Assembly (NCBI GenBank): GCA_965655095.1
Contig: OZ296657.1
Span: forward strand, 7,688,001 to 7,752,000
DNA: 64,000 nt
Source of the DNA: Haplodiscus bocki
Lineage: Eukaryota
Direction of reading: 5' to 3'
The position numbers were made by a program, and so were the translations under genes. Below the pieces are notes generated by a model. The model was not told the origin of the DNA and made no database searches. It saw only the letters and a program-made list of their open reading frames with translations. This document shows positions 39,171 to 60,194 of this stretch, piece by piece; within the stretch, counting starts at the first letter, position 1, and the number at the start of each line of letters is the position of its first letter.

Positions 39171-40478
39171 TACATGTTTTTTCAAGAGATTTCCACAATT
39201 TCGCGGGGTTTTTGATTGTTTTTTTTGCAAAATTTTAATTAGTTTTGTCTGCGAAACTTTCCAAGTTTCCGGGGCTACTATTTATATTTATTGCTCAGTT
39301 GTTAATCTTCGATACATTGCAAAATCCGAAACAAATTCGTCAAACTGAGAAAATTTTTGAATGCAGAAAATTTTTCGGCAACAACAATAGCTCAGGCACC
39401 AATTGAAAAAAAATTATGATCGAAAATTTTTGTTGCATCATTTGGTTTTCCAGAACAAATAACGCAGATGATTGTTCTTTTGGGACCACTTTTTTTAGCG
39501 GAATGTGCCAAATGGAATCTAATGATTGGCTGATTTTTAAGATGAAAATTTTCCCACTAAAAACTCAATAATTGGGAATTTTTTGTTAATCGATTATATT
39601 AATAGAATATGATGGATCATATTACTGGCTTGTATGTACATGGTTTTAATTGTGATAATGTTCATACGCTTGAAAAGCCCCGATTTGAGTTCTTGTTGTT
39701 ATACTCCCTCGTGCTGAAATGTACAATGAGGGCTTCTGTGAGCTAAAATGGTTCCGCAATCAAAAACAATGACCAAGTCATATATGTGACAAAAAATGCA
39801 AAATTGGGAAAATGTGCACTATGGTGCTTTGTACAAAGTTTGCCAACGCAAAAACTACCGGCGCGAGTCACTCTGCTGTAGTATGGGCTCAACGGACGCG
39901 AGACTGGGACAAAACAGCCGATTTTGAAAACGGGACAAAATCGCCGATTTTGATTATGAGACGATTTATAATAACAGAGATCGCTAGTCTCTGCAAAGAT
40001 GAAAGTTGTTCCAGATAAAAGCGTATTGGCCTAATTACGGATAATTAGCAATTGAATTAACATTATACGAAAGAAATGCTTCAACTCCAGAATACCAAAC
40101 CCAAAATAACCAAGCCAAAAATACACGAAGTCAAAAATTTTTTTGAGCAAAATTTGACTTTTTTTAAAAAACCAAGTTTAAAATTCTGGACAGCTAGGAA
40201 CAGAAAACTATGAAAATTGATAATCTCAATATCTGCAAAACTAAATTTTGTGCCACTTAATGAAATGGCAATAAAACTGAGAAGCTATTACGAAAAACAT
40301 CATAATTTAGGCTTTGCGCTATATAATTCTGTGATTTTTCTTGATACCCAATTGCATGAACCTAAAATATCCGGAAAGACCATCTCTGAATATTTTGGTT
40401 AAGGCGTTTTAGTTTTTCAGGAGAAAGGTCACTAATTCAGAGAAGTTCGGAACACAAAAAATAAGGGGTGGGTACTAC

Positions 40479-40857
40479 TGAAAAGCTGTAATTTCTTCGG
40501 CTTTCTACAGCTCGTTTTGAAGAGACGGTTTTTGAACATTATTTATTTCCGTCAGTTTTTGCACTCGGTTCTGCCCCGAACAACGCTTCATTCAACACAA
40601 CGAAATCAGCCAACTGCCAAAAGTACAATGATACATTTATCAATAATTGTAAGCAATAAATTCGAATCGATAGCAAGACTTTTTCAAGGTTAAAAGATCG
40701 AATATCTGATGTTATTCGAGATATTAGAAAAAAGACGAGATTTCGTCTTTAGCGGGATTCGAACCTCGGACCTTGGAATCTCAGGCCGAAACGCTACCTC
40801 TACAGCATCCATCCTTGGTAAAATAAATATTTTTCTGATAATTATTGTTTCGCAACA
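40479..40857 (-). repeat. 3' LTR of the BEL/Pao element (379 bp)
   Basis: Direct repeat of 49950-50329, roughly 70-80% identical by eye. Preceded on the minus strand by the PPT-like GGGCCCGGAGGA (40858-40869). Confidence 0.9.
40725..40815 (-). ncRNA. tRNA-like Pol III cassette in the 3' LTR
   Basis: GGATGCTGTAGAGGTAGCG...CTGAGATTCCAAGGTCCGA-GGTTCGAATCC (B box 40755-40765), then a hairpin AAAGACGA-AATC-TCGTCTTT running into TTTTTT. Confidence 0.55.
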
Positions 40858-41049
40858 TCCTCCGGGCCCAAGAAAATAGCGAAAAATCAGAAAATTAACA
40901 AAAGAATTTAGGGTTTTCTGATAGCTTTTCCAATATAAATTACATGAGCAGAAGGGTTAGATAAAGAGTTTTTTAAAATACGGCGGCAAAAGGTCAACGA
41001 AACAATTCCAAGAGCTATCGGGGGATGATAGAAAAGATTGAATTTTACA

Positions 41050-44000
41050 ATCGGACGTATCAGTTTTCCCGTCATTGTCCCAACTTCGGCGAATCTAGCA
41101 ATAGCCTCAGTACCGTAGTTTATTTCAACAACACGTGGAAGTGGGTAGTAGTATCCTTTGGGACTAGTAGCTTCCGCAATCTATTCTAGATCACCAGTTT
41201 TGAGGTCTCGGTCTGCCAAAGAAGACCATTTCGATCGGCGGTTCACAGTTGGAACGTACTTTCTCAACCATCGAGTCCAGATGGCGCCAGGATACGCTTG
41301 CTCACGCGCGTAACGTCTTTTGTCGTCAAAGCTGCTACTCAAAGTTGATGGTAAACCTGAGCCGGCAGCTCCTAGAAGGAAGTGGTTTGGAGTCCAGATA
41401 TCGAAGTCAGTCGCAGCGGCAATTGCTGGAACTAGCGGGAAAGCGCTCAAACTTTGTTCAAATAGACAGAATGTAGTCGTTAGAAATTCATCGGTCAGTC
41501 TTCTATTTCCGATTATGGCGTGGAAAACATGCTTGAAAGTTCTCACCAATCCTTCCCTATCACCTCCGTAGTGTGGCGAACTCGGTTGATTGAATTTCCA
41601 CTTGATACATTTTTTACCAGAGTTTCAGTCAAAACTTGCTGATTCCAATTGAGGATGTTGTTCAACAATTCCCTTTGACTGGCAGTAAAGTTTGTCCCGT
41701 TTTCGGACCAGATAACGAGTGGAACGCCTCGCCTGGATACAAACATTTCAATACCCATCACACAACTATTGATGTCCATTGAGGGCACTACTTCAAAATG
41801 GACTGCGCGAGTAGTTAAGCAACTTCAGTTGAACGTTCCACTGACACATAGAACGGGCCAAAGTAGTCGAGTCCAGGTAACCGGAAGCCAGGCGCTCTTT
41901 CGGGAGATCAACCATCATCGAATGGAGTGTTACAGCTTTGCGCTTGCGGCAAGTGAGGCACTTAGAGTGGATTGACCTCAATGTAGGCCTAAGTTTCACA
42001 ATGGCAAATCTTTTTTGACTTAGGGCTCTCAGATACTCAACACTTTGGTGGCAGTGCTTTATATGTAAGTATTGCAAGTGTAGATGCACTAAAGGATGAC
42101 GACTGTAAAGCAGAATAGGATGCTTCACGTCAAAAGTTGCGAGTTCCAACTGCTGAATACGTCCGGTTGTACGAAGCATTTGATTAGGCCCAATGAAAGG
42201 AAAAAACGTCATCAATACTCTAGCCTTGCTGATGGGGGACAATGTTAGCAAGTTCCTTTTCTCGGCAGGAAAGGATTCGGTTTGTACAAGAAGGAACAAT
42301 CTGCGTTCAGTTTCTAAGATTTCGTCCGGGTTGGTTGTAGACTCACTAGTGGTTCGGTAACCACTGAATTTCGGCAAAATACGTAACATATACGCCACAA
42401 TGCGCAAAAGTTTCTCGTAAGAGCTGTACTTTTCCCACTAGAAAGTTGATGCCTTGATGGTGACATGTGCCGTAAGCGTTCTCATCTCATGGGTCTCGTT
42501 CTTCATCAATTCAGTTCCGGGTGCAAATTTTCTTGATTTCATCTTCGTAATCACGTCAGAAAGAGGGATAAATGGCCAGTTAGGACTTCTCAAAAAGTCA
42601 AGACCTTTCAACCAGCTCCTTTCGAGCAGAGCAGTGGCACACAATCCTCGAGTGCCAACGTCTGCAGGGTTATCATCCGTCGGTACATGATTCAATTTGT
42701 CATCTCTGATCAGTTCCAAAAATGCAGCAACACAGTTTGCAACAAAAACAGGCTGTTTTTCAAGCGAGTGCATCCAATGTAGTACGAACGTTTTGTCAGT
42801 CCACATGAAACATCTTTTGATATTTAGTGAAAATGAACGTTGCACTTCCTGTCGCAATCAAGGTGCTAGGAAAGCAGCTTGTAACTCCAAATTCGGAATT
42901 ATTAGACATTTCATGAGAGCGACGCCCGCTTTGCCGAAGACGAAGGTTAACTTGGTTGCTTCCGTCGCTTTGGTTACAAATTTGCCTCAAAGAAAAACTA
43001 CAGCACTAAAGATGTGTTGCATGTTGTCTCCGAACAATCTTTTTTCCAGTTTTTCCACGATTTTTTCGAAGTAGCTTCTCAGAGTTGCATTTTCTTTCAG
43101 CAGCTGTAGTTCTCTACTTCATTCCAGGAACTGGGTAACAATGGTGTCCAGTAAGTCATCGTGTTATTTTTGTCCGTTTAATCTCCAGAGGTCCTGCAGC
43201 AGGAGACGGCACTTCACGGTGTATGGAGCAACAAGGTCGATGAGGTCGTACACTCACGATACAATACTGAGGACTACTCGCTGGGTAATGGCTGTGTTCA
43301 AGTCTCAACTTGTACCGCCAATTACAACTAAAGTGTAAGCTCGATGATTCAACCTTAGGCCCAAGACATGGAACGAGTCTGCAACGCTCGGTAGAACTTT
43401 AATGTAATTTTGTGATGATTTGCGGCCATGTTGGAATTGAGATGAAACGCTTTAAACATTTGTCACAAAATTTGTTAGTATAAAACCGCCAACAGTGAGC
43501 AGTTTCACGAGAACTTGGGTTATTCGTGTTGCGTGGTCAACAGTCTGACTTGACTCTAAATAGTCATCCATGTAAAAGTTTTTCCGGACACTTTCTGACG
43601 CTTCTCGAAACTCACTCTGGTTGTCTGTGGCAGTTCGTTGAAGAGCGTATTAGCAGAAGTTGGCGAATCTTTGGATCCAAAACTGTGGCGAATGTACTGC
43701 AACAATGCAACCTCGGTGCAACCTGCCACAGAAAAACGGAGAGACGGTCGGTCTTTTAAAATGACTCCCACATGAAGAAACATTCCTTCATTGTCAACAG
43801 AAACTGAATACGGGTGTTGTGGAAACAGAGTAGCACGTGGATGAAAGTTTGTAGCAAGTCAGGCCCAGTTAGAAGTGCATTATTCAGCGAATGGCCATGA
43901 AGCATAGCAGCGCCGTTGAGGACTGGTCGTACCTTGCCGGGTCTGTGCGTGTGAATTACTGGTGGTAAGGTAAGTAGCACTCACGGGGTTGGTCGGCCTT

Positions 44001-44830
44001 AAAAAAAGTACTTTTTGACTTTGATGATGTAACCTTTTGAAAGATCTTCACGGATGGTCGTAGAATACTGCTCCTTCAAAATCGCATCCTTCTCAGGACG
44101 GCGTTCAAGGGATTTGAGTTGAACTAATGCCGAAAAAAAATTGTTCGGTAAACTAATTTGGTCAATAGCCCAGAACATACCAACGTGATGTCGGGAACCA
44201 TCTTGGTATGTGGTTTCTTGAAAGATCTTCTCTGCTCGCGCATCGACTGCAGAGCGTGGGTCGACTTGTTCATAGGCCTTGTGGGACTCGATGTCATACC
44301 AGGAACGAATTTGGTTTTCTCTTTGAGTAACAGCTTTGAAGCATGTTGAGAATAGACCCGAGGTCGAGGGCTGTGGAACAATCAATACCCAAACAAAAAG
44401 TAAACGGACGGCTCTTGGAGTATTCCTTCAATCAGTTTCGAAATACGCAAATGGGCGGATACAGTGGAACATACCCTGACCAAGTATCAACTCTACATCT
44501 CCTTAACTGTACTTCTTCACATCTTTAGAGGAAACGGTTTTAAGTGCGGATAATGGACTTGTAATGATTCGATATCAATTACTTCAGTTCCAACGTTTAG
44601 GCCTTTCGTAACATACCGCTTGAGCACAAAAGCCGGACAAGAGCCACCCGAAAGAATCGGTGTCAACTTCAAATCGACAAATTGCGTGTCAATGTTTTGA
44701 TGTGAGTTGATCCCGTGAACTGTAAGTTTCAAAGATATGCCTTACACGTTCAATTTTCTAGCCAGTTTTCGGTTTTCCTCGGGTTACTGCATGCAGAATC
44801 AAGAGGAAAAGCACTTTCTCAGTGTGAAAA
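41050..44830 (-). pseudogene. BEL/Pao pol (protease, RT, RNase H, integrase, C-terminal domain), with many frameshifts
   Basis: LDSACS protease site ~44790; KVRPVLNGAA, LNNALLTGPDLLQ, FGSKDSP and FYMDDYL (~43570); FVAN..DNPADVGTRG..WLKGLDFL; HCH..CLTCRK; IWSENGTNF; TPNHFLLG..WTRWLRKYVP..RRSKW. Confidence 0.92.
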
Positions 44831-44949
44831 GATGATTGCAAAAAAACTTCAGTTATCTGCATTAAGACCTTAAAAACCGTCACAGACGGCATGCCGGGAC
44901 TCTCGTTTGCTTTTTTTGTAACAACAGTTACCTTGCTTGGCGTAGTTAC

Positions 44950-47900
44950 CTTGTTTTTGTCAGTCTTTTCGAGGCGTTATTGTGGAAAATTTCTTTCGGA
45001 GCCATTGAGAGGAGTATTGTGAGTGCTTGCGCATCCTTGCTTCAAGCACTGTCGCGGTTTTGGGCCCCTGCGGAACGAATGTTGCCGATTCAAGCGTATA
45101 AAAGAAAGTTTGTTGTGTGCAACCAATTTAGTCCGTTGGGTCGGCGTCTTTTCGTGGAACAATGGACAACGCAATGAGGGGTGTTTTTCTTTACAAGCAA
45201 TACAACTAGTGGGTTGATTGTCGGTTTTGTCTCCCAATGACAGTGGTTAACTGGAGCTGGTGGACGCAAAAAATTTGGTTCAGGTCTTCGTTCTAGTGAA
45301 TTTAGAAGGTGGGTTGCTACCTTCGGTTTTCGGGTATGCTGAGGATAAATTCATTCTCTCGTGTGCACTTGCTTAGTCCTACAGCCAGTCATTGACTTCA
45401 AGTAAATGTCGGAAGATCCCAGTTCTTCTTCAACGTATACATAGACCAGGCTCCTTTCAAATTTCATGGCAGCTTCTGTATTCATTGGACTAAGACCAAT
45501 GCACTGGAAACATCTTGATGGCTGTGCAATGACCGAAAAACTCCTACCAAAGCAGAGATTCTCGCGGAACACCTGAGCACACTTCCACTATTACACATTT
45601 TTAGTGACGGTAAATTGCTGAGTTTATCCCAGTAAGCACTCACTACTGCCTGTGGCTGCCGAAACTTCCACTCTAACGTCTTTAAAGCGTCCTTGTACAT
45701 AGTTCCGCAGTAAGCAAACTCTCCATTCGCCGTCTTTGCCTTGCCAGTCATTAGAGTCTTCAAGTACCTCAATTTAAAAACGTCTGTTCTTGGAGCTCTG
45801 TCAATGGTACTCTTAAACTGACCGAATCACTTGTGCCATTGTAAAGGGTCTCCGTTGTTTTGCCCCAGTTTCCACTCAGATAGGTGGTCTTTTCTTGAGG
45901 TCTTTCCAGTAGTTGAGCTAAATCTTGTACCATGAAAGCAGTAGGTTCCATTCGAGGCGTTGCAATAGACCCCGTAGGTACAACTCTGGGTCTTGCAACG
46001 GTTACCGGAGCTGTTGATGAATTTTTAATTGGCATATCGCCTCCTACAAGGTTTTGTCCCGAGAATGGATTCAAGTAGTAAACAGTATCACCATTTGTTA
46101 CGGGAACTAATTGTTGAACAAGAGCGTTTTGGTCATCAGTGCTTGGTACTCTTGTAAGGCCTTGCAGAGCCGACTACGATATGGCAACACCCGGTTGTTG
46201 GAAAAATCCATACTGACAGATTCAGTAAAACATGATTAGCTGGCACAGTTAAAATTGAGTTTGGTTTCGAAGTGGCTACGTTTTGAGCCATCAATGACAC
46301 AGAATCATGATTTGATGGATCTGGTCGCGATTGAGTGACATTCGGTTGAACGCAGTTTTGTGCATGGTTAATTGAGGTCTGATTCAAATGAGTCGCAGTA
46401 GGAACACTAACGAAAGGCTAGGTGGTGTTAGGTCTACCTATTTCAGTCGTAACATCGCAAGGAACCCCCACTAGAGACCCTGAGTGGGTTTCCTTCTCTA
46501 CTCTGGACTCCTGCACCTGAGGTTGAAATGCGACTTCGGTTGAGGCGTTAGAGACCCAGTTAATCAATCTTATTGATTTTACACTTTGACTGTGAGCACT
46601 GCGTTCCGATAATGCATTTTCAGGGGTTGGTTGGCTTCTAAGACATCTTCTTTTAGTTCTAATTCAGTCAATGTTGCTTCCGCCAGCCTCCTTCTATTAT
46701 TTTCCTCCAGTTCAGCAAGCCTCGATGCTTGTTCTCTCTTCAATCGCTCTTCTTCTTGGTTGAGCCACTGGAGGTAAAATTCTTGCTTCTGTTGAGTTCA
46801 ATCTCTCAATTTCTCCGCATCGGTGTTTTGCAATGAAAAGTTTTCGTTGTCGCTGCCTGGATGTCTTGGAAATTCATTAAGTGGACGTATTGGAAGTCTG
46901 AGAAGCAGACTTGGCTTTCGGAGCGGTTCTAGTGGAAAACTCTGAAGTCTTTTCCGTTTCAAGAAGGCCATCAAAATATACACGAGCCTTTTCCAAAATT
47001 TCGTCGTTATCCACAGTCACGTCGCTCAACCAGTTTTGCAAGTCACTTTTCAATGCTTCGGGTTTTGTGGTCTTTTTTTGCGATAGAGTAGAGTTTTTGG
47101 TGTCTATCAAATGTTTTGGTCACTGTTGGTTTTGGTTGCGGTTGAGTGGCATTTGGTTGAACGGAGTATTGGGCAAGGTTTAATCATGGCTGATTCGAAC
47201 TAGTCAGATTAGGAACACTAACGAAGGGCGAAGTAGCATTACGTCCTCCAAATTCAGTCGCAATGTCGAAAGGAACCTCCGTTAGAGACTCTGTGCGAGT
47301 CCCCTTCCTAGTCTGGAGTCCTGCACCTGAAACTGATTTGCAACTTCGATTGAAGCGTCAAAGAACCAGTTAGTCAATTTTACAGATTTAACACTTTCAC
47401 TATGCAAACTAAGTTAAGACAATGTCTCTCGCAGGGATCAGTTGAATTTTGAGACATCTTCAAATAGTTTTATTTCAGTCAGTGTGGCTTATGCCAGTCT
47501 CCTTCTACTATTTTCCTCCAGTTCAGCAAGCATCAGTGCTTGTTCTTTTCGCAGTCGCTCTTCTTCTTGCTTGAGCCGCTGGAGGTCAAGTTCTTACTTC
47601 TGTTGAGTCAGACGCAACATACTTTCGTTCTGTTGTTCAATCTCTTCGCGTCGGTGTTTTGCAAGGAGAAGTTCCCGTTGTCGCTGGCTGGATGTCTTAG
47701 AAATTCAGGGAGTGGACGTATCGAAAGTCCTAGAAGCATACTTGGCTTTAGGAGCGGTTTTCAACGGAAGATTGGGAAGTTTTCTTGTTTCAGGAAAACC
47801 ATCGGTATACTCAAGAGCCCTTTTCAAAACGTCGTTGACTTCCAGAGTCACGTTGCTCAACCAGCTCTCCAAATGACTTTTCAATGCTTCGGGGCTGTAG

Positions 47901-48110
47901 TTTCATCTGCAAAAGAGTACAGTTGTTCGTTTTTCGCAACTGATTTGGTCATTGCTTCTTCACAAAATCTAACCAAACTTTCAACGCGTGCCTTTCTTTC
48001 TGCGATATATACAGCTTCTATTAAGTGCCGGTGGTACATTTTAGCTCTGCCTCCGCTTTAGCACGTTTTCATAATGTTTTTTCACCTATTTTGTGTTGTG
48101 AATCAGCCAT
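44950..48110 (-). pseudogene. BEL/Pao gag with an internal tandem duplication
   Basis: YLKTLMTGKAK..YKDALKTLEWKFRQP (DUF1759-like) and degenerate triple knuckle CIACKEKH..CPLF..H..C..GCASTHNTPL. Segment ~46385-47110 is repeated at ~47195-47930. Confidence 0.85.
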
Positions 48111-49932
48111 TGTCAAACTAAGCGTCAGTTTTTTTGATAGTTTAAGAACTGTTTCAATGTTAATTTAAGGTGCCAAGACAAATAGAGGACGGGAAATTCG
48201 TTCGTTCTTTATTTTTTTTTCAAAATAGTGACGAGCTGTCAGGGGGTTTTTGAAGACGGCGTTAAGTAAACAGAATGTGTTCCAAGGCTTTAAAACTTCA
48301 GTCAGTCAACGAAGTCCGGACACCATCACTAAAGTGAACTGAAAGTGGAGGGGGATGACTTTTCGAGGTATCAACCTGACAACGAAGTCTGGACCCAACC
48401 GTGAAAAGGTGGGTGAAACTGTTGAGAAGAGAAGCAGTCAATTAAACCTGGACGCAAACGCAACAGCGTATAAAAGGCGGGGATTTAGCAAAGCGAAGAA
48501 GTGGCGGTTGTCTTTTTTTGACCGCTTCTATCATGCTTACTATGTCGTTTCTGTCGGCTTTCAGCGGTAATTGGAGAAAGATCACTTTCCTTCAGCAAGA
48601 TAAAATCAATGTTCTTCAATTCAATCTCAGGGCTCTGCTGTAATGCCTTCAACTGGTTCAAAAGACCAGGATTTTTTTTGCTTTCTAACGGAAAGAAAAT
48701 CTTTTACATTGCTGATCACTTGAATTGAATTGTTCTTCTTCCAATTCTTTAAGTCAATCAGAAATATCGGGCGTACGGTCAAGCTTGCAAAACAAAAGAG
48801 CACTGAGCTTGTTTTGAAGAGTTTTTAATACTTTTATCAGTTCCGGTACCAATAGGGGTCTGTAATTCTTACGTTTATGTGTACAAATGCTAGTATTTAA
48901 CACATCCTGTCAGAAAACAATCTCGGTCTTACTTTTCAGGTCTTTCGAAAGTATTTTTTGCAGATCTTTTCTCGGATTTTCCGTGTAAAGATTAGGACTT
49001 TAGAATAAACTTTATCTTGGTACTTTGATTGTTGTTCAGAGCTTAGCACATCTATCGCGTGATGAACAGAACTTGCGGCTAAGATGTACACCATGCAAAC
49101 TTTCCAAATATTTTTCAACGGTTTTAGCGCAAAGCGTCTGTTATATGAAATTTCGGTGCTTTGGAGTAAACAATGGCATACTGAAAAAATATGACGGCGT
49201 GGGAAAACAAAACGCGTTGTTTTCGGAAAGATTTTCAAAAAAGTTTTTGAATGTCTTGCTATCGAAAAATTAAAATTTAGGACGCCAAAAACTTAAAGTT
49301 CAAGTTTCATCAAACCGGTACTGCTCTTGTTTTTTCGCTTCTTCACTTCTTCACTTGCCGGAGTTGTTTTGATAAATCTCTCTTCTGGTATCCGACTCGT
49401 GTTTCCCCGAACCTTGTTCTGGGGTTGCTTCCTTCATCATCACTGGGGTTGCGACACCTCCTGTATCCCAATGTCGACTAGAATTAGTTTCGAATATACT
49501 GGACGATTGATGCATCACTTTCTTCAACAACTTGTCTTTTTCTGATAATTGTTGTATCTTACTTCCAACCGAGAGTGTATGAAATACAATTTAAATAAGG
49601 AACCAAATAATAAACGACAGACAGATTCTCAAATTTAGTCCTCCTTCTTATCAAACAAGTTTCGAGCATCAAATCCGTTCCATCCCATAGAAAAGCCCAT
49701 CTTTAACTGCTGCAGTGACTCAACGAGCACAAAGAACTATAGGTTGAATTATATCTTCGCAATATGAAAAATAACAATTGATAATCACAAGATGATAAAC
49801 GACAAAATTTGTTCAAAACTCAAAAAAACCTTCCCCGTTTGTAATTCGATCATCAAAGTTTAAAGCCCGGAAGACTCGAATTTGCGTTCATATCTGGTCA
49901 CTTGAGATTTTCTTCAGTTCAGTAGCATCGAA

Positions 49933-49949
49933 CTTCTCTATAACCACCA
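49933..49949 (-). promoter_or_regulatory. Primer binding site
   Basis: TGGTGGTTATAGAGAAG directly follows the 5' LTR terminal CA on the minus strand; primer tRNA not identified. Confidence 0.7.
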
Positions 49950-50329
49950 TGAAAAGCTGTAAATTCTTCGGCTTTTTCAGCGCGTTTTGAAGAGATGGTT
50001 TTTGAATCTTTTTTATTTCGGTGTGTATTTCTATTCGGTTCTGCCCCGAATAACGTTTTAGTCGATACATCAAAATCAGCCAATTGGCAAAAGTACAATG
50101 ATTTATTTGTCACTATTTGTGAACATTTTTTTTCGAATCGATACCAAGACTTTTTCAAAGTTATTATCTCGAAAATTTAAGGTTATCTGAGATATCAGGA
50201 AAAAGAAAAAATTATGACTTTTGGCGGCATTCGAACCTCCTACCTTGGAATCTCAGCACGATACTCTACCTCTAGACCATCCCCTCTCGATAAAGAACAT
50301 AGATTGCTGATATTTATTGCTTTGCAACA
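49950..50329 (-). repeat. 5' LTR of the BEL/Pao element (380 bp)
   Basis: TGTTGC...TTTTCA on the minus strand, followed by the PBS and flanked by ACTAC. Confidence 0.9.
50198..50287 (-). ncRNA. tRNA-like Pol III cassette in the 5' LTR
   Basis: A box TGGTCTAGAGG, core CTGAGATTCCAAGGT, B box GGTTCGAATGC starting 42 nt after the A-box start, then TTTTTT and TTTTT runs. Confidence 0.55.
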
Positions 50330-52372
50330 ACTACAAAGTTAGGTTAATGGAAGCGAGGGTTCTGATAAAATCTTTGGTGCTGGCATTTCGAAAATTTTTA
50401 GTTTCTAATAGTACTTGGTGATATAATTGCTAATTATCTATAATTACGCCAGGTCGCTTTTATCTGAGAAACAATTTTGAAGGCAGTTTGTTCTCTTATA
50501 CAAAATCGGAAGTTTTGACCTATTTTAAAATCGGCGCTTATGTCTCATTTTCAAAATCGGCTCTTTTATCTCATTTTCAAAATCGGCGGTTTTGTCCCGT
50601 TTCCAAAATCGGCCGTTTTGTCTCATTTAAAATCGGCTGTTTTGTCCTGCCCCGGGCTCAACTACAAGCTTGGTGAAGCACAGGCAGCTAACTAGCTTCT
50701 GAATCATTCAGCTATTTATCCGGATGAAACTAATGGCCACGTGCAGTTCGACAGCAACCACTGTTAATTTTTCTCACGCAATAGGAAAAACGAATTTCTG
50801 AAAACCACTTAAACTGCTCGAACTTCAGGATAGAATTTGTTTTTTGAACATTTGCGAGATTAGTTAGTTAGCCCAATACGTCTTTTAGCCTCCAAGAATA
50901 CTCCTCTAAGTTCAAGTGATAATCCAGTGGCACCCCAGAGCAAAATGCGGACCATATTGTCGCTGCCAGTAGGTTTACAAGGTTTGGAATGCTCAGAAAA
51001 AACCGAAAATAAAAAAAATCGATTATTCCAACATTTTTGTTTTTCGCATGTATTCAATCAAGCGGACAGTTCGGTAGGAAACTGTATTGAAATTTATTAT
51101 GTATTGAATGGTATTGAAATAAATTGAAGTCTTGCTTCATTTCTCCACGGAGTAATTACGATTGCCTACCGAAACAAACAAATCAAGCATTCTGGTAGCT
51201 TTGACCTAGAAAAGAAAGCCGCAACACAATATTTTTGACTTTTTCGCTAATGTGTTTGCCTAGATGCCCGCGAAAGAAAACGAGCAGAACCTTTCTGGAA
51301 ACACGCCATTGAGTGTTCATTACCTGAGAGTCAATCAACCCAAGAGTCAAATCATCCAAGGAATTTATACGCATTAACTGTAATACAATTGACAAAATTC
51401 TTGATTTTTTTGGCAAAGTCCGGGCATTTTTTCAACAACTGGGGCAGCAACAAGCAATGATTAAAGTTCAATTCTACTTTTTTTCCATACATAATTTGGG
51501 ACATGGTCGCGTGCGACCTTGCAGTACATGTTTTTTCTCCAAACTAGAGCGCTCCTACCAAATCGTTCTGAGATATAACGCTCGAAAGTTACGAAACACT
51601 GAGGGCTGTCAGAAATCTGGGGCAACAACAGCAAGAAAAATTTAAAAGACATTTGCTTGTTCCAAATTTCCATGTTAAAATAGGCATCGCTTTGCTTGCC
51701 TAAACATAAGCGCAGAGAACTTCGCTAAAAGCTTCGAGTGACGTCTTCAATATCGCGAGCCGTCAGAAAACCACACTCTGTCAGTGATTGAGCAGACTGC
51801 GTTACACCAAAGGAGTAATGACGAGAACAAAAATCAGAAATAAAGTCAAATTTACCTGGTTGACCACTCCGAAATCGCCAACCCTTAGCCATCGGTGATA
51901 TTCTATAAAAAAGAGGTACCTTATTCTTATTAAGTAGGCCAAGTATTATTCAAAAGTGAGAAAAATAACCAAAGGGATGAGTACCAATTTTAGGATATTT
52001 GGAAATATATTTATTTGTTGAGGCAACCGTGATGTTTTCGTTGTTTTGATTAGTAACTCCAGACTTTCATTTGGACAGCTGCAAAGGTATTGACTTCAGA
52101 ATTGAAAGATGAGAAGACTAGAATTCATCGCCAGCAGATGGATCTCGAAGAATTCAGATGAAAAATCCCAAGTCATTGACGTGAAATGACTAACAAAAAC
52201 TAGTTCCCCAACAAATTTTTGTGTTCTTTTCTACATAAATCAGTCAGTATTTTTTCTTAAATTCAGATTTCAAAAAACTGCACACATTTAACAACATGTA
52301 TCGATGATGTTCTTTTTTTGCAAAAAATGCCTGTTTTTTTATCGGCAATTTCAGCTCCTGCCAATACATGTT

Positions 52373-52938
52373 AGTAGTGTACAAAAAAGCATAAGAGGCC
52401 AGCTGCGGCGGCCGCACATATCAACCAAAAAAAACTAAAAATAAAAAAATTCATAGCAGAGTCCCTACACAGGGGCATAATTATAAAATAAAATAAAAAA
52501 CCACACATGAAATAGGATAAAAAAATTATGCTATATCAAGGGGGGTATAGGACTAAAAACCTAATTTCATAAACTAGTGAAATCACATGAAACTATAACT
52601 TATCGATGTTGTAAAATTAAAATTTAAATAAAATTTGTAAGAATAAAATAAAAAAAAATATTTATCAATGTGGTAGGAAATTATAAATAAAATTACACTA
52701 TATCAAGGGGGTATCATAGGACTTTATAATTTATCAAGGATGTAAAATTATAATTTAAACAAAATTGAAAAAAATTAAAATTTCAACGATGTATATAAAT
52801 ATTTAAAAAAATAATATAAAATATACAAATCCTTGTGTAGGATAAAACTGCTACGTATTTTCTTCTTTTTAATTTTTTGTTAAAATGTGTGATCCTTGCA
52901 ACTAGCCTCTACTAGCCTGTACTTTTTTGTACACTACT
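52373..52938. mobile_element. 566-bp segment bounded by Polinton-type AGTAGT...ACTACT inverted termini
   Basis: AGTAGTGTACAAAAAAG at 52373 and its exact reverse complement at 52922-52938; imperfect match continues to ~70 bp. No 6-bp target duplication. Confidence 0.75.
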
Positions 52939-53742
52939 TGAAAATTATGTTGAATTTTAAAACTTTGTAAAACTAAAAAAATCAAAGAAATATACAATAA
53001 TAATTATGTTCATTTATTCGATCACATGAAATTATGTTAAATTATACTATGCGGGTACACAGGAAAGAAGAATAATTTTCGTAAAAAAATTTTTGCAATG
53101 ATATTACGCAGGAAATTATATTGAAAACTAAAAAATTATGTGAAATTATAAGAATACAACAACTTATAAATTATACTATCGCTCCCATGGTTTACTTTTA
53201 ACTTTGAATTATAATTAAAATAGATATATATTGAAAATAAACAATGTATATTATAAAAAAAACGTTTATTTGAAAAAATAATCAATCATTTGTGAAATTT
53301 GAAAATCGATAAAGATGAAGATCGACTTGTTAGTGAAAATTTATTGAAAATCAGTCGTAGTTTAAGATATGATGTTTATAAGAATAATATTAAAAAATTT
53401 ATTCTTAATATTAAAATAATAAAAAAATAATATTAAAGAGTTTTTTTTGAACAAATTGAAGTCATTAAACAGTACAGACAATCTGTAATGAATAGTTAAA
53501 ATATAAGTTTTTCCGTTCTATAAACAAAAATTTTTAAAATTAAAGGTACGATTCTTGGTTACAGTATATGAGAAAAATAATGAGTATTGGTGTGATATGT
53601 TACAGGAATAATAAAATACAACTATTGTGTATGCACAACTAAACCCACACAGACTCTGTTCGAAAATTAAGTGTACAAGGAAGAAATTTTCATCGTATTG
53701 AGAAAAAAAACAAAGAATTTCACTGTAAATTATTTCGATTAA

Positions 53743-54280
53743 ATGACTTATTATTGTAAATTATGTGAAAAATCAGTGATAAACAAATCAAAAAATATTC
53801 ATTCAAAGTCAATAAATCATAAAACACTCGATTATTCTAATATAAGAACGTATATTTTTCTCACACCCAATTTTGATGATGTTGATGAAATAATGAGGAA
53901 ATATAATAACATCTATAATGAAAATATGATCTATATGGGATTCATTGTGTATTAAAACTATTACACAACAAATCATGTTAGATATATTATGATTAATACA
54001 AAACTTAATTTAGATTATCTTTTTAACTTTTCTAAAAATTCGATTTTGTCTAGAAGCAATCAAGATCGATATTTTTTTCTCATCTATATGAGATTCAAAT
54101 TACTTTTAAAAGTTCTATTAGATTTTATATGACAAAAGATTACTAACTTAAACAACCAAAACATATGTGTGAAATTAAATTAAAGCAAGTATTAGCTAAA
54201 AACTCACGAATTATAAAACGTTTAATTAGACAGTCAAACCTTCCATTAATTAGAAAACATACTCATCGAGGAAAAATTTA
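53743..54280 (+). pseudogene. C2H2-like zinc-finger viral protein, frameshifted
   Basis: MTYYCKLCEKSVINKSKNIHSKSINH (CxxC...HxxSxxH). Confidence 0.55.
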
Positions 54281-54343
54281 GAGTTGTCATTGATATACAA
54301 ATAAACAGTTTTAAATTAATATAATATTGTTTTTTGCTTTTAA

Positions 54344-54660
54344 ATGAATAACACTTATTTTGTGGAACAGAAAGCAAAAACTGGTGATCTCAATGCTTAA
54401 TTGATAAAGAGACATTATATGTTTGATAAAATGACTTAATTTAAGGAAATCAAGTCTACCAATCCAAAACTAAAACAATCTGAATAAGCTAGAGAACTGA
54501 AAATATGATCATCTACACTACAACGATATAGAAGAGAAGTAAATATGCTTTCACCCTATAGAACACCATCGTCACCAAACACTCACACAAGAAAACACAA
54601 GACTTCACACCATATAGAAAACGACCTCAAAACGCTGTTGAATGACCTCATAATGACCTC
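54344..54660 (+). pseudogene. Helix-turn-helix protein with internal stops
   Basis: NPKLKQSEIARELKI*SSTLQRYRR. Confidence 0.6.
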
Positions 54661-55199
54661 AAATTTTCTTGGCTGACTTTAAAGAAATCATAAAAAAAGA
54701 TTCTAAGGTTCAAAACGAAATAACACAAACCATAGAAAAATACAACAAACAAACATATTCGACACAATCAAAAATAGGTCAACATGTTTTAATTCAAAGA
54801 AAAGTCCCTGAACAAGCAATAAAAAAAATGGGAGAGACTGTTGAAGATATGGATATTGAGACAGAGCAGAAACATAATAAAATAGAATTCTTAGAAAATG
54901 AAATACGATTACCGGATTTTAAAGTTATTTAGGAAACGAATAGATTAGGATTTAATAACATGTCATCCAAAAGAATAGGCCATACGAATATGGAGAAAAT
55001 AAAGAACTCGCTTAATAATCATAAATACATTAAAAACAAAAACAATTAAATCTAAAATCTTTAAACAAAAGTTTTCTGTTGATGATGACTTACTTATAGA
55101 AACAATTTCATAAGAAATATCTATCTGTTTATCAATTTTTGTATACAACCCCTTTTATCTTTGTTAAATATTGCCATATTTCAGCTAGAATAAATTTTG

Positions 55200-55590
55200 G
55201 GAAAGCGAATTTGATAACATCGTTTCTTCAAAAGTTGGAGTTTATGATAGCATTATTAATCAATTAAAACTCAAAGTAAACGATACTTTTGAAAAGGATG
55301 AAAAATTAACGACAAATTTTGAAAATGTTTGATGACTCAGATGTAATAAATAAAATTTTTTAAGATGAAAAATTATCAAAAACACAAGGTCAGACCTCTA
55401 ATATTGAAAAAGTTTACAAAGAACTCAAATTGCTTTGCGACAAACAATCTAAAGAAGATGTTTTAATTCAAAAAGCTGTGAAACCCACTATAAAAATACT
55501 TTATAACCAGGGTTTATTCGGCAATTACAACACTTCTGTTGCAACAATTCAAGACTTCTCGTTAACTCGAAGATGACCCGATTTAGAGGA
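55200..55590 (+). pseudogene. Possible fiber-like structural protein remnant
   Basis: DSDVINKIF*DEKL resembles the DxxNKxYVD fiber repeat; otherwise unassigned. Confidence 0.3.
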
Positions 55591-55609
55591 AGTAATAACT
55601 AATTAAATT

Positions 55610-56021
55610 CAACGATTTTGTTATAAATAAACTTTAGAAAATAAAGCAACATCGGTTATAAAAATTCAACAAAGCCATTCTTCTTTAAATTTGAGGACAT
55701 AAAGATCTGTTTGACAGATGGTACTTTTTCAAGTGATATAGGAATAGAAATTTACACTCATCTGAAGGAACTCATTGGGTTTGTTATATAAGCGAAAATT
55801 GTTTTGATTCATATGGATATATATGCCCTAAAATTTTATCCAAAGTTATTTTAAAACGAAATGGACATTGTTTATATTCTGAAAACAAAACACAGGGTCT
55901 AACGTGCAGAAGAGAATCTTATTGTTCAAGTTACTGTTTACATAAAATTTATATGACAAAAGTTGTAGGAATACATTTTGAATCTGCTGTTTTAAATTTG
56001 TCCAATCAAACAATTTCTTGA
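55610..56021 (+). pseudogene. Adenain-type (adenovirus/Polinton) cysteine maturation protease
   Basis: Open from 55749: NLHSSEGTHWVCYISENCFDSYG...KTQG...SYCSSYCL, giving His, Asp, Gln and Cys in adenain order. The 5' part is frameshifted. Confidence 0.85.
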
Positions 56022-56212
56022 TTAAAAATGACATTGAGAAAAATAACTAATGATAAAAGTGTAAAATAGATTCCACAAAAGGAACAAACTCAAGATAGTA
56101 AACATAACACGAGAAAGAATGATCCACTTTCTCGTAAACAAAACAAAACCATTTTAGAAAACAATGAAAAATTCATTAAAAATAAAACAGGAGGAGTATT
56201 TAAAATATTTAA

Positions 56213-57270
56213 ATGATGAACAACGAATTGTTACTCCTAATTAAAAAACATACAGATACGTTAACTGAACAATCAAAGACAAAACATCAAGAAACGCATG
56301 ATTTTAAACTAAATAGGAAAATTGAAACTTTTTCTCTAAATCCATCAATAAAATTAGTTGAAGAAGGAGAATGGCTATTGGGAGTCACGAATTTTGAAGG
56401 ACCGATCTTTGTTCTTAATATGACTGACGAAAACAATAGTTTTCCAAGAGGCAAACCAGGTCGTTGGAGAAGTCCTAACTATTTAGAGGATGGAATTATT
56501 TAAAAACTAAGGAAATTACTAAAACATAAATCTCAAAATGGTATTGAAATACATGTCGAAGAGTTTGAAAAGAGAGTAAATAAACAAAAATTGAAATCAA
56601 TATATTGTCCTTATCAGAGATTGATACCTTAAAAAATACTTGAAGAATTAGAAAGCGATAATTATCAAACTCTCTTGAAGATTTAGTTTATACAGTGCAA
56701 CTAACATATAATGAAATTATGGATGTATTAGATATAAAATATTTTCTATCAAAAAGAACATGTTATACCTTACCACCTGGAATAAATGAAATAAGCGATT
56801 TTAACAAAACTCAGTATTTTATCAACCAATTTTGTGAAAGTAAGTAATACTATTGATGATATTAGATTAAGATCTATTTTAAATATTATTCAAACTTTAG
56901 TTTTCCTTGAAAAAAATTTTTCCATACATTTTTAAGATTTACTTAATCGCATTCGGGAGCCCTAGTTGATATCGATGTATATATTCAAATAAAACCAGGA
57001 ACTTACAAAAATGAAAAACCTATTAATATTATAGGCGTTGACAAAATTCGTCTAAAATGTGATTCTATTAATAGTAGTATTGTTAACGATATGCGAGAAC
57101 CTACTTTTTAGGGTCATAAAGTATATAAAGAACCTCTAATTAAACTTTTTAAAAGAACAAATAAAATTGATCTGTCTCAGATAACCTTTTAATTGGAAGA
57201 TTATGATCACAAAGCTGTTGATTTTAATAAAGAAACGGTAAGTTTCACTTGTCAACCAATTAAAAAACAA
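56213..57270 (+). pseudogene. Minor capsid (penton-like) protein 1
   Basis: N-terminal FSLNPSIKL..EWLLGVTNF; C-terminal VDKIRLKCDSINSSIVN..EP..LSQITF*LEDYDHKAVDFNKETVSFTCQ. Confidence 0.7.
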
Positions 57271-57289
57271 GAAAAAAGTGAACCTTAAT

Positions 57290-58381
57290 ATGATTATTCT
57301 CAAAAATGAGAAAAAAAATTTTTACTTTCAATAAGTAAAAATTGTGAAACGCTCTTTATAAAAATCATAGGAAAGCAAAAGAAACATTGGAATTTAAACT
57401 CACCAAACAAGAGAAACTTTTTCTTTCAAACCACCAATATCGATTGTTGAATGTTGCATGATGAGGTTAATAGGTCTAGAAGTATATAATTCTACTTCCA
57501 ACATTAACATTATAGCACAAAACAACAAATTCGAACATTATACAGGTACTTTTGATGAGTTTTCGTTTGAAGAAACAGAAGAGGATCTTGGGGAAATCCT
57601 TAATACTTCAGATATTACATCATCTCAACTTCAACATGAAATAACAAAACCGCGTAATATTCAAGCGCATATTAAATTGCGATTAGAAGAGTCAAACGCT
57701 GGCGGTCATGTTATAATTTTAATAAGTTTGCTAGATCTCCATTTCGAGATTTTGAATGTTATCTCAGAATTGTAGTTGGTTCGGATGAAGATGATGTTCA
57801 ATTAACTTTAGAACAATATAATTCATTTTTTATCGCCCATGAATTGACTATAATGTTTTACACAATTAAAGATATTTCAGAGGTTGTTTACACCATGGGT
57901 CATCACGAAGGAACCCCACAAATTGAATATGATGTTGGAAGCATGAAATTAAAAATTATTTTGACTCGTTTTTGATCAACATTTGGAACGTTGAGATTTG
58001 ATAATAAATCCTTTTTTATTACTTTATTAGGTTTCACACCATATTCGGATTATAAACCCAATAATGCTACTCATGCTGATTCTTCATGTGAATACACTAG
58101 TGGAAAAATTTTAAATTTAAGTTTAATAAATATAAATCTTTTGAAATGTGATGTTATTGATTGTACTCTTCAAAATGGTTTAAAACAACCAATAATTTTT
58201 AGTTTCGTTTCAGATAAACCACCGTGGTATAAAGTAAATTGTGAACTTGAAACAATTCATTAAAAAAACAAATAAATCTGTTTTGAATACTATATCATTT
58301 TTTTTAGAAGATGATAAAATTGAAGAAGTTACTTTTGATGGAGAAACGTTGACATTTACTTTACAATTTTTTAAAATTTGA
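57290..58381 (+). pseudogene. Minor capsid (penton-like) protein 2
   Basis: FSFKPPISI..LIGLEVYNS; LLGF; INLLKCDVIDCTLQNGLKQPIIFSF..KPPWYKV..LNTISFFLEDD..VTFDGETLTFTLQF. Confidence 0.75.
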
Positions 58382-58384
58382 ACT

Positions 58385-58789
58385 AATAAAAGAGTTTTCA
58401 GAAATTTAAAAGTTTTTCTTATTGTGCTGGAGGTAGACATAGATCTGCTACAAAAAGTATTTATGGTGATATAACCTCTAAAGTTAATAAAGTACTAATT
58501 CGTTTTTAATCCATTTGTAATACAAAAAAGTTGATGACTGTTGGTGATAACACGATACAAGCAGAGGGACCAGGTAGCTTTTTCAAAAAAGTTGGGAAGA
58601 ATTTCTGCTAAAGTTGGTAATTTGTTAGCAACTAATGTATTGAAAAATCCAACCAGAGCTTTGGAAATTACTTCAAATATTGCTACCGCAGCGGCATCTT
58701 GAAGCCCTAAAGCAGCTTCATCATTACTACCTAAAGTTTTCATTTTTTATCACACAAGAAAAAACTTGTATTTGCCAAGATGTATTTGA
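58385..58789 (+). pseudogene. Small virion protein with Cys/His knuckle and amphipathic helix (protein VI-like by analogy)
   Basis: SYCAGGRH...*SICNTKK..IQAEGPGSFFKKLGRISAKVG..VLKNPTRALEITSNIATAAAS*SPKAA; two in-frame stops. Confidence 0.55.
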
Positions 58790-58799
58790 TTTTATACCA

Positions 58800-59340
58800 C
58801 TTAGGTGGAAAAAAAACAAAAAAATTATATCCTTCTGCTCCTATATTGGTTGACGAGGATTTTAAGAAGAGCTTAGAAAAAACACAGAGTAATGTAAATA
58901 GTTTTGATAATTCAATTATTATTATTAGAGAAAAGATTAGATACTTCAAAGATGAAAACAAAAAATCTAAAAAGAATCATAAATTCAAAAGATTCTAAAC
59001 ACAATATCAGAATCAGTAGACACAATTGTTATTATTGGAGCAAGCTCAACTTCTATAACTTTATCGATTCTTGGTATCGGTTTAATTATTTTACCAGTAT
59101 CAGCTGAAATTGCGTGTGCTCTATCATTAGGTAACAAAGTATTACATAAGATGATCATAAATAAATGTATTAAAAACAAAAAACAATTTTATAAAGACAA
59201 AAAAAAACAATTAATTGTTTTGATAAAGTATACAGAAAGAGCTTGCAAGTAAACGTGATTGAAAAAAAAGATTATGAACCTCTCTGTAATAGTTCTACTA
59301 AGATTTTGCATGAAACGAAAAATGAATCCTTTTTTAAATA
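58800..59340 (+). pseudogene. LYPSAP coiled-coil plus hydrophobic-hairpin membrane protein
   Basis: KKLYPSAPIL, a coiled coil, then after a frameshift VDTIVIIGASSTSITLSILGIGLIILPVSAEIACALSLG and a basic tail. Confidence 0.6.
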
Positions 59341-59477
59341 TGAACATTAAAAAAATTAAACTTCTTCAGTAATAAAAAAATGAAATTCAACCTGGAACAT
59401 AGAACTTAGAACCGATCTGTTTCAATAACTTGTGAACAGTTCTTTGTTAATAACATGTGAACTGTTCCATATTTTAA

Positions 59478-60194
59478 ATGGATAAGAATAAAAATTATAC
59501 AGTATGTAACATAAAATCAGATATAGACAATTACAAGAAATACAGAACTGTTTGTAAGGATTGTTACCATAAAAAGAAAAGAAAAAGCAATAATAGAACC
59601 TTAATCCAAAATACACATCACACCTCTTCTGGAAATGATATTAGTACCTCACACCAACAATCAAAAACCGATACTGTTAACAATTACAATCGAACCCTCA
59701 TCATAGGATTTTCAAATTGTGGTAAAACCTACCTAATGATTGGTATTCTGCTTCAAAAACAAGAACCAGTTTTTATAATTACAAAATCACTAAATCAGTA
59801 TCCTAATATCGAATCTCAACCATCAGATGAAACACAATTTTTAGAAGTTTTAAGAAACAGTACCCTTGTTTTTGACGATATGTTGCAATCGGAACAAGCA
59901 AGCAACACCAATTTGTTTTTTACAAGAAGGGGTCATAATAATAGTGACATATACTATATATCTCAATGCTATGTTTTTCTCCCAAAAAACAAAATTCGTA
60001 AAGATTCTAATATAATTATTTTATTTTTACAAACTCGAGGGGATATCATACTAATATTTCATGATTTAGCAGGATTAAATATGAATCGAGAAAAATGGAA
60101 ACAGCTTTGTCATAATGCTCTGGGAAATATGTACATATATCTCAAATTTTACAGAAACAGCATCGTTTGCACGTTGTCCACCCTTTGGTTCTAG
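59478..60194 (+). CDS. A32/FtsK-like DNA packaging ATPase of Polinton type; 3' end probably disrupted
   Basis: Walker A RTLIIGFSNCGKT, Walker B LVFDD, FTRRGH arginine motif, ISQCY..LPK..IR..SN, N-terminal Cys cluster (VC..VCKDC). Confidence 0.9.
   Translation: MDKNKNYTVCNIKSDIDNYKKYRTVCKDCYHKKKRKSNNRTLIQNTHHTSSGNDISTSHQQSKTDTVNNYNRTLIIGFSNCGKTYLMIGILLQKQEPVFIITKSLNQYPNIESQPSDETQFLEVLRNSTLVFDDMLQSEQASNTNLFFTRRGHNNSDIYYISQCYVFLPKNKIRKDSNIIILFLQTRGDIILIFHDLAGLNMNREKWKQLCHNALGNMYIYLKFYRNSIVCTLSTLWF

What the first reader, a model, noticed from the sequence alone, without database searches (positions are those of the whole stretch)
40725..50287. Both BEL/Pao LTRs carry a complete tRNA-derived Pol III unit in U3
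Seen: about 50 nt inside each LTR, sense to the element, lie an A box (TGGTCTAGAGG / TGCTGTAGAGG) and a B box (GGTTCGAATGC / GGTTCGAATCC) at tRNA spacing. They share a CTGAGATTCCAAGGT core and are followed by an oligo-T run, predicting a ~85-95-nt RNA. The T-stem does not pair, so it is not a functional tRNA. Presence at the same position in both LTRs means it was part of the replicating element rather than a later SINE insertion. Established parallels: 5S sequence in Cassandra LTRs and Pol III miRNA cassettes in foamy virus LTRs. I know of no BEL/Pao example but cannot check. Inference: an element-encoded small RNA, alternative promoter or TFIIIC insulator.
Basis: partly seen in the sequence, partly recalled or inferred. 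Interest (0 to 1): 0.75.

Follow-up and report, generated by a model that had tools for sequence, protein, structure and literature searches.

The report
tRNA-like promoter block inside BEL/Pao LTRs
Both end-repeats of an old, dead BEL/Pao retrotransposon carry a decayed tRNA-like block with RNA polymerase III promoter boxes; related elements in other assemblies carry it at the same place, which extends a feature so far described only in miniature elements (Helenus) to full-length ones.

Summary
The element lies on the minus strand at 40479-50329. It has 379-380 bp LTRs, a 5-bp target duplication (GTAGT), a PBS, a PPT and BEL/Pao protein remnants. At LTR positions 51-61 and 93-103 each LTR has an A box and a B box at tRNA spacing, followed by a T run at about 119-130.

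The block belongs to the LTR family. It is in all 25 aligned full-length copies, and every hit whose surroundings were read lies inside an LTR. It is not a SINE insertion.

Homologous blocks sit at the same LTR place in related BEL/Pao lineages from other assemblies (integrase 62-74% identical). One of those elements has 99% identical LTRs. Three lineages at 52-57% identity lack it. Across five lineages the B box is the best-conserved 11-mer of the whole LTR.

Within this genome the copies decay evenly, so they are neutral relics. No tRNA model, ARAGORN run or folding supports a functional tRNA or a structured RNA. No RNA data exist, so Pol III transcription is untested.

The closest known kind is Helenus/TRIMp3 (Kojima 2024), which is restricted to miniature elements. 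I rate this a new variant of a known kind, of moderate interest. The scan noted the same block earlier on two other pieces of this genome.

The parts
40479..50329 (-). Whole BEL/Pao LTR retrotransposon (9851 bp), old and broken
   Evidence: Direct repeats, LTR alignment with TG..CA ends. Pfam DUF1759, Integrase_H2C2 and DUF5641 all on the minus strand in gag-to-IN order. Family copies carry Peptidase_A17 (Pao peptidase), H2C2 and DUF5641.
49950..50329 (-). 5' LTR (380 bp)
   Evidence: 79% identical to the 3' LTR.
40479..40857 (-). 3' LTR (379 bp)
50330..50334 (-). Target-site duplication GTAGT (upstream copy)
   Evidence: Read.
40474..40478 (-). Target-site duplication GTAGT (downstream copy)
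   Evidence: Read.
49900..49949 (-). Primer-binding region starting TGGTGG directly after the 5' LTR; decayed form of a long tRNA-complementary stretch
   Evidence: The young relative L094 has the intact form, seen by the tRNA model on the opposite strand.
40858..40870 (-). Polypurine tract (ends GGAGGA) before the 3' LTR
   Evidence: The same tract precedes the LTR in L094, L097 and L098.
50200..50286 (-). tRNA-like block of the 5' LTR: predicted start about 50286, A box 50279-50269, B box 50237-50227, T runs 50211-50200
40728..40814 (-). tRNA-like block of the 3' LTR: A box 40807-40797 (one key base changed), B box 40765-40755, T run 40733-40728
45482..45772 (-). gag-type DUF1759 remnant
   Evidence: Pfam E=1.6e-7.
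41181..42407 (-). Integrase zinc finger and DUF5641 remnants
   Evidence: Pfam. An intact-frame relative, L085:102-1106, has H2C2 and DUF5641.

Best explanation
This is an ancient, inactive BEL/Pao LTR retrotransposon. Its LTR family carries, at LTR positions about 44-130 and in sense orientation, a degenerate tRNA-derived segment with an A box, a B box and a T run.

The segment entered the LTR of an ancestor once, most likely by capture of a tRNA gene fragment or a tRNA-type SINE head. It has since been copied with the LTR through a whole subclade of BEL/Pao elements in several host species.

In replicating lineages the B-box core (GGTTC-R-A) is the best-kept part of the LTR. It therefore most likely serves the element in cis, as a TFIIIC / Pol III entry site upstream of the LTR's presumed Pol II core promoter. 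That could give a short Pol III transcript of about 80-90 nt, and/or keep the LTR promoter in open, insulated chromatin.

In this window both copies are neutrally decaying relics.

Shown: the structure, that the block belongs to the LTR, conservation between lineages, and that it is not a tRNA. Inferred: tRNA origin, TFIIIC/Pol III binding, and any benefit to the element.
For: - Structure of the element and boxes.
- More than chance: 1 hit against 0.02 in shuffles, and no hit outside the LTR block in 285 kb.
- Family membership: the block is in 25 of 25 aligned LTRs. The 30 best block hits and the first 30 of 60 hits to the 31-mer (reversed control 0) all lie in LTR context. Only one exact A+B match exists in the genome, so there is no young SINE with this head.
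- Other assemblies: homologous blocks about 45-50 nt inside the LTR in L094 (integrase 74% identical; LTRs 99% identical; TSD CCTAT), L098 (68%), L099 (both LTRs, 67%), L097 (62%) and L101 (62%). They are absent in L100 (57%), L096 (56%) and L092 (52%).
- L094 comes from another host genome: its flanks and its LTR have no counterpart in G000.
- Five-lineage LTR alignment: mean pairwise identity 0.43. The B-box 11-mer scores 0.736, rank 1 of 370 windows. GGTTC is invariant.
- A run of four or more T follows the B box within about 15-50 nt in every lineage read.
Against: - The tRNA covariance model gives no hit at E<=10 in any copy or lineage, even in a 116-nt search space. ARAGORN at default settings gives none. 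tRNA origin therefore rests on box motifs, spacing and similarity to the model consensus judged by eye.
- The A box is not specially conserved between lineages (rank 113 of 370) and is poor in the young L094 LTR.
- Other LTR blocks are nearly as conserved as the B box. The alignment has only five lineages, it is AT-rich, and conserved words can anchor it.
- Within G000, the A box (0.90), the B box (0.88) and the rest of the LTR (0.876, sd 0.036) decay alike.
- The predicted RNA has no stable fold: z between -0.66 and +0.87.
- No RNA run holds the locus, so no transcript, Pol III or TFIIIC evidence exists.
Confidence: 0.55

Rival explanations
1. Neutral passenger. A tRNA or SINE fragment was captured once in the LTR of an ancestor and has hitch-hiked since without any role. 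The apparent B-box conservation comes from few lineages, shared ancestry and alignment anchoring.
For: - Even decay of the block and the rest of the LTR within the genome.
- The A box is not conserved between lineages.
- L097 carries a change at the A58 position of the B box, and L102/L103 have a degenerate B box.
- No RNA evidence exists.
Against: - The B box is the top-ranked of 370 windows. GGTTC is invariant across lineages whose integrases are only 62-74% identical and whose LTRs are otherwise 43% identical.
- An element with 99% identical LTRs retains the block.
Confidence: 0.3
2. Not tRNA-derived at all. An ordinary Pol II enhancer or transcription-factor site in U3 happens to resemble A and B boxes.
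For: The tRNA model and ARAGORN are negative in all lineages. No acceptor stem is present, and the T and anticodon stems pair poorly (and reading).
Against: - The two boxes occur in the right order and at tRNA spacing, with an expected chance rate of about 1e-4 per LTR.
- The stretch between the boxes also follows the tRNA model consensus (CU-NNN-A, then UCCAAGG, then GGUUCGAAUCC) when set beside the consensus printed.
- Published Helenus LTRs have the same layout (PMC10886601).
Confidence: 0.1
3. A working small-RNA gene: a functional tRNA, or a miRNA-type hairpin cassette like those in BLV or foamy virus LTRs.
For: A box, B box and T run are all present.
Against: No cloverleaf is found. There is no stable hairpin, and six copies fold no better than shuffles.
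Confidence: 0.03
4. Two independent SINE insertions into the two LTRs after integration.
For: None beyond the presence of a tRNA-like head.
Against: - The block sits at the same position in both LTRs, in 25 of 25 family copies and in other lineages.
- No free-standing copy turned up among the genome hits whose surroundings were read.
Confidence: 0.01

Closest known systems
Helenus / TRIMp3 (Kojima 2024, PMC10886601)
   Same: Both are LTR retrotransposons with a PBS, a PPT and a target duplication, whose LTRs hold a tRNA-like sequence with boxes A and B. In both, tRNAscan-type tools mostly reject it as a real tRNA. The fungal Helenus LTRs quoted also carry the block a few tens of nt from the LTR start and end in a T-rich stretch.
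   Different: - Helenus was defined as miniature non-coding elements (311-1263 bp; the screen kept only those under 1000 bp). Animal Helenus make 4-bp duplications.
- Here the LTR belongs to 6-10 kb BEL/Pao elements with gag, protease and integrase. The duplication is 5 bp. The shortest derivative seen is about 2 kb.
- No shared 10-12-mers with the published Helenus sequences apart from the generic B box.
- Kojima argued that autonomous partners should not share such LTRs. This family does.
Cassandra (5S rRNA sequence in TRIM LTRs of plants) and Ajax
   Same: A small-RNA-gene-derived Pol III promoter carried inside both LTRs.
   Different: Those carry a 5S-derived type-1 promoter in non-autonomous plant or nemertean elements. 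Here the block is a tRNA-type A/B-box promoter in an animal BEL/Pao element. Rfam finds no 5S.
tRNA-derived SINEs (SINE2)
   Same: A degenerate tRNA-like head with A and B boxes that no longer folds as a cloverleaf.
   Different: The block is never seen outside the LTR. It has no own tail or target duplication, and it exists in low copy number, a few hundred at most.
Pol III miRNA cassettes in BLV and foamy virus
   Same: Pol III-type signals inside a retroelement.
   Different: Those encode stable pre-miRNA hairpins. Here there is no stable hairpin.

Membership tests
BEL/Pao LTR retrotransposon | Pao-type polyprotein domains (DUF1759 gag, Peptidase_A17, integrase, DUF5641) | tested here: met
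   Window: DUF1759, H2C2 (weak) and DUF5641. Family copies: Peptidase_A17, H2C2, DUF5641 and a weak rve match. Relatives L092 and L093 carry the full set.
BEL/Pao LTR retrotransposon | LTRs with TG..CA ends, PBS, PPT and a 4-6 bp target duplication | tested here: met
   GTAGT duplication on both sides.
Functional tRNA gene | Cloverleaf recognised by the tRNA covariance model or ARAGORN | tested here: not met
   No hit in the window, in 41 family loci, in a 116-nt search of the best copy, or in the four other block-bearing lineages tested.
Pol III type-2 promoter unit | A box and B box in order at 30-60 nt spacing, with a T run downstream | tested here: met
   Met at motif level only. Only 3 of 25 family copies keep all three parts.
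Pol III type-2 promoter unit | Transcription by Pol III and binding of TFIIIC | not testable with these tools
   No RNA run holds the locus. No ChIP data are available.
tRNA-derived SINE | Free-standing dispersed copies with their own tail and target duplication | tested here: not met
   Every hit whose surroundings were read is inside the LTR. There is one exact A+B match genome-wide.
Helenus / TRIMp3 | tRNA-derived sequence with boxes A and B in the LTR of an element with PBS and PPT | tested here: met
Helenus / TRIMp3 | Miniature non-coding element (TRIM, about 0.3-1.3 kb) | tested here: not met
   The element is 9851 bp with coding remnants. LTR pairs elsewhere lie 1.6-10.8 kb apart. The deletion derivative is about 3.4 kb, and one copy is about 2 kb.
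Helenus / TRIMp3 | Sequence kinship with published Helenus families | tested here: inconclusive
   Only the generic B-box word is shared with the supplement's sequences. Word search across line breaks is imperfect.
Cassandra / Ajax | 5S rRNA-derived sequence in the LTR | tested here: not met
   No 5S match in Rfam scans.

The most novel reading that the evidence does not exclude
A whole subclade of autonomous BEL/Pao retrotransposons has kept a working internal Pol III promoter (TFIIIC site) in U3 across host species. It makes a short LTR RNA and/or shields the LTR promoter. Such autonomous elements are the direct parents of Helenus-like tRNA-bearing miniature elements, through internal deletion and not through a SINE landing in a miniature element. 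That runs against the published expectation that autonomous partners do not share these LTRs.
Probability: 0.3. Interest if true: 0.7.

Novelty: new variant of a known kind. Interest (0 to 1): 0.5.

Why it matters
LTR retrotransposons are thought to rely on Pol II. Pol III-type promoters in LTRs are so far known only from miniature non-autonomous elements: Cassandra, Helenus and Ajax.

This family shows the same kind of block in full-length BEL/Pao elements and in their deletion derivatives. The B box is the best-conserved LTR word between lineages. This has three consequences:

1. It offers a simple route by which tRNA-bearing miniature elements can arise.
2. It gives a concrete sequence for testing whether TFIIIC or Pol III helps an LTR element, for example as an insulator or through a small RNA.
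3. It warns annotators that tRNA-like hits and SINE calls in such genomes can be LTR parts.

Tried and rejected
- tRNA detection (ARAGORN at default settings, Rfam at E<=10) on the window, 41 family loci, a 116-nt cut of the best copy and the relatives found nothing at the block.
- ARAGORN at very lax thresholds calls 'tRNAs' all over the LTR, so it is uninformative.
- Folding six copies of the predicted 92-nt RNA gave z between -0.66 and +0.87, so there is no structured RNA or hairpin.
- I looked for a free SINE with this head. Block and 31-mer searches return only LTR contexts, and an exact A+B pattern occurs once.
- LTR copies that seemed to start at the block (query position about 50) turned out to have a more diverged first 50 nt. 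They are not Pol III-type retrocopies.
- The test within the family for extra conservation of the boxes was negative. It is also uninformative, because the copies form a star-like, neutrally decayed burst.
- Public sequencing runs gave only four unlabelled runs of one study, none on record as RNA.
- Taking tRNA genes from G000 to name the donor tRNA was not possible.
- Literature searches for a BEL/Pao case found none.
- Comparisons used real copies and per-column counts only. The consensus lines are automatic output of the alignment tool and were not used.
Full report
**What is there.** A repeat search found two direct repeats about 9.47 kb apart. Reading and aligning them on the minus strand gives:

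- a 5' LTR at 49950-50329 and a 3' LTR at 40479-40857, starting TGTTGC and ending TTTTCA;
- a 5-bp target duplication, GTAGT, at 50330-50334 and 40474-40478;
- a primer-binding site starting TGGTGG directly after the 5' LTR;
- a purine tract ending GGAGGA directly before the 3' LTR.

Minus-strand ORF pieces match DUF1759, Integrase_H2C2 and DUF5641 in gag-to-integrase order. Better-kept family copies add Peptidase_A17, the Pao peptidase. The element is therefore a BEL/Pao retrotransposon of 9851 bp. The LTRs are 79% identical (K2P 0.25) and the ORFs are shattered. It is an old, dead copy.

**The block.** In both LTRs, in sense orientation, an A box starts at LTR position 51 and a B box at 93. 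T runs follow at about 119-130. Coordinates are in the parts list. The box spacing is 42 nt, against 44 in a tRNA.

A relaxed A+B pattern hits the window once, against 0.02 in shuffles. It hits nothing outside this block in 285 kb of fetched loci.

In this window neither copy is fully canonical. The 3' LTR A box has C for G at its third base, and the 5' LTR B box ends GC instead of CC.

**It is part of the LTR family.**
- The genome (1.5 Gb) holds at least 186 candidate LTR copies.
- 25 full-length copies align with a mean pairwise identity of 79%. Identity within an element is no higher than between elements, so this was an old burst followed by neutral decay.
- All 25 copies carry the block.
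- Searching the genome with the 74-nt block, or with a 31-mer at up to 3 mismatches (60 hits, reversed control 0), returns LTR contexts only wherever the surroundings were read.
- An exact A+B pattern occurs once in the genome, so there is no young SINE with this head.
- Copies that seemed to begin at the block simply have a more diverged first 50 nt.
- Within the family the A box (0.90), the B box (0.88) and the rest of the LTR (0.876, sd 0.036) are equally conserved. Only 3 of 25 copies keep A box, B box and T4 together.

The host has therefore not preserved these copies.

**The family also has non-autonomous members.** At least five loci share one internal deletion junction, element position about 2071 joined to about 5620. 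Many copies join position about 6550-6640 to the DUF5641 region or to the 3' LTR. These are derivatives of about 3.4 kb, and one is about 2 kb. They carry the same LTR and were evidently copied after the deletion.

**Relatives elsewhere.** An open 335-aa integrase frame from a family copy (L085) was searched against 1.84 billion representatives. I fetched the contigs behind ten of the closer hits. Results by integrase identity to L085:

| Locus | Integrase identity | Block in the LTR? |
|---|---|---|
| L094 | 74% | Yes. 343-bp LTRs, 99% identical, TSD CCTAT. Same purine tract and LTR start; homologous block about 45 nt inside both LTRs |
| L098 | 68% | Yes, at the same place |
| L099 | 67% | Yes, in both LTRs |
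| L097 | 62% | Yes |
| L101 | 62% | Yes. Its LTR is 72% identical to the window's family |
| L102/L103 | 58% | Partly. The A-box word TGGTCTAGA is kept, the B box is degenerate |
| L100 | 57% | No |
| L096 | 56% | No |
| L092 | 52% | No |

For the tenth contig, L095 (64%), no LTR start could be found.

L094's flanks and LTR have no counterpart in this genome, so it comes from another host.

In an alignment of one LTR per lineage, mean pairwise identity is 0.43. The B-box 11-mer scores 0.736. That is rank 1 of 370 windows, above even the LTR terminus, and GGTTC is invariant. The A box ranks 113, although the adjoining D-arm-like word ranks fifth.

A T run follows the B box in every lineage read. 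In such AT-rich DNA this is weak evidence.

Caveats: there are only five lineages, two come from one assembly, and the alignment is AT-rich and can be anchored by conserved words.

**What it is not.**
- The tRNA covariance model and ARAGORN reject it in every copy and lineage, including the young L094 LTR.
- There is no acceptor stem, and the T and anticodon stems pair at only 2-4 of 5 positions.
- The predicted 92-nt RNA folds no better than shuffles.

It is therefore neither a tRNA gene nor a hairpin cassette. tRNA descent rests on three things: the two boxes, their spacing, and similarity of the 3' half to the tRNA model consensus printed, judged by eye. From memory, and unverified, the A-box region resembles the D arm of insect tRNA-Glu.

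**How it most likely works.** What is shown: an inherited U3-side LTR block, kept across a BEL/Pao subclade, with the B box under the strongest constraint.

What is inferred:
- The B box binds TFIIIC.
- With the A box and T run it may drive a Pol III RNA of about 80-90 nt.
- Alternatively, or in addition, TFIIIC binding may keep the LTR promoter open or insulated.
- The block's placement in U3 is also an inference. Downstream of the block the family LTR has a TATA-like word (ATATAATAAC), a TATCGA word and an AATAAA.

Pol III cannot make the full-length 6-10 kb RNA, because the element is full of T runs. The genomic RNA must therefore be a Pol II product.

I put about 0.55-0.6 on this package as a whole, and about 0.35-0.4 on real Pol III or TFIIIC use. 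The main rival is a neutral passenger (0.3).

**Comparison with what is known.** Kojima 2024 (PMC10886601) described Helenus, miniature LTR elements with tRNA-like LTR sequences, and grouped them with Cassandra and Ajax as TRIMp3. The paper notes in passing that 'not a few' Repbase LTRs contain tRNA-like parts, but it kept only elements under 1 kb. It argues that autonomous partners must use Pol II and are unlikely to share such LTRs.

The present family works like Helenus at the LTR level but fails its size and non-coding criterion. It shares no specific sequence with the published families.

My searches found no description in BEL/Pao. The searchable library is limited, and Repbase and Dfam were not available.

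Two earlier notes of this scan on other pieces of the same genome reached the same reading. I saw them only after my own analysis.

**Verdict.** This is a new variant of a known kind. Expression is untested because no RNA data exist.

Noticed in passing
L094:4094-4157 (and the decayed counterpart in window 49949 downwards): Directly after the 5' LTR, the sense strand is complementary to about 61 nt of a tRNA-like sequence: acceptor, anticodon region, T arm and CCA, without a D arm. The tRNA model scores 17-19.5 bits on the opposite strand. This is far longer than a usual 18-nt primer-binding site. It may reflect read-through of the primer tRNA during plus-strand synthesis.
   Followed up: partly
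L066, L067, L070, L076, L089 (and L007, L026, L030, L077, L078): A non-autonomous deletion derivative of the family, with the same LTRs and about 3.4 kb long (one copy about 2 kb). At least five loci share an identical internal junction, so it was copied after the deletion.
   Followed up: partly
window 46313-47062 and 47124-47893: An 811-bp tandem duplication inside the element's 5' internal region, 75-85% identical. No Pfam match in its ORFs.
   Followed up: partly
window about 50505-50650: About five tandem copies of a roughly 27-nt unit (AAAATCGGC...TTTTGTC...) just outside the 5' LTR.
   Followed up: no
window 52001-60000: A very AT-rich stretch (GC 25-28%) against 33-44% elsewhere in the window.
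   Followed up: no
G000 C7:23.68-23.78 Mb, C4:107.93-108.14 Mb, C11:32.11-32.18 Mb: Long tandem arrays of high-scoring tRNA genes, often 1.4-1.7 kb apart. The first-look count of tRNA-like candidates in the genome is very large (about 138,000, a rough figure).
   Followed up: no
L061:2233-2982 and L075:1820-2653: Open frames next to two family LTR copies match host-type domains (Band_7/SPFH and LDL-receptor class A). These LTRs probably sit in or beside host genes.
   Followed up: no
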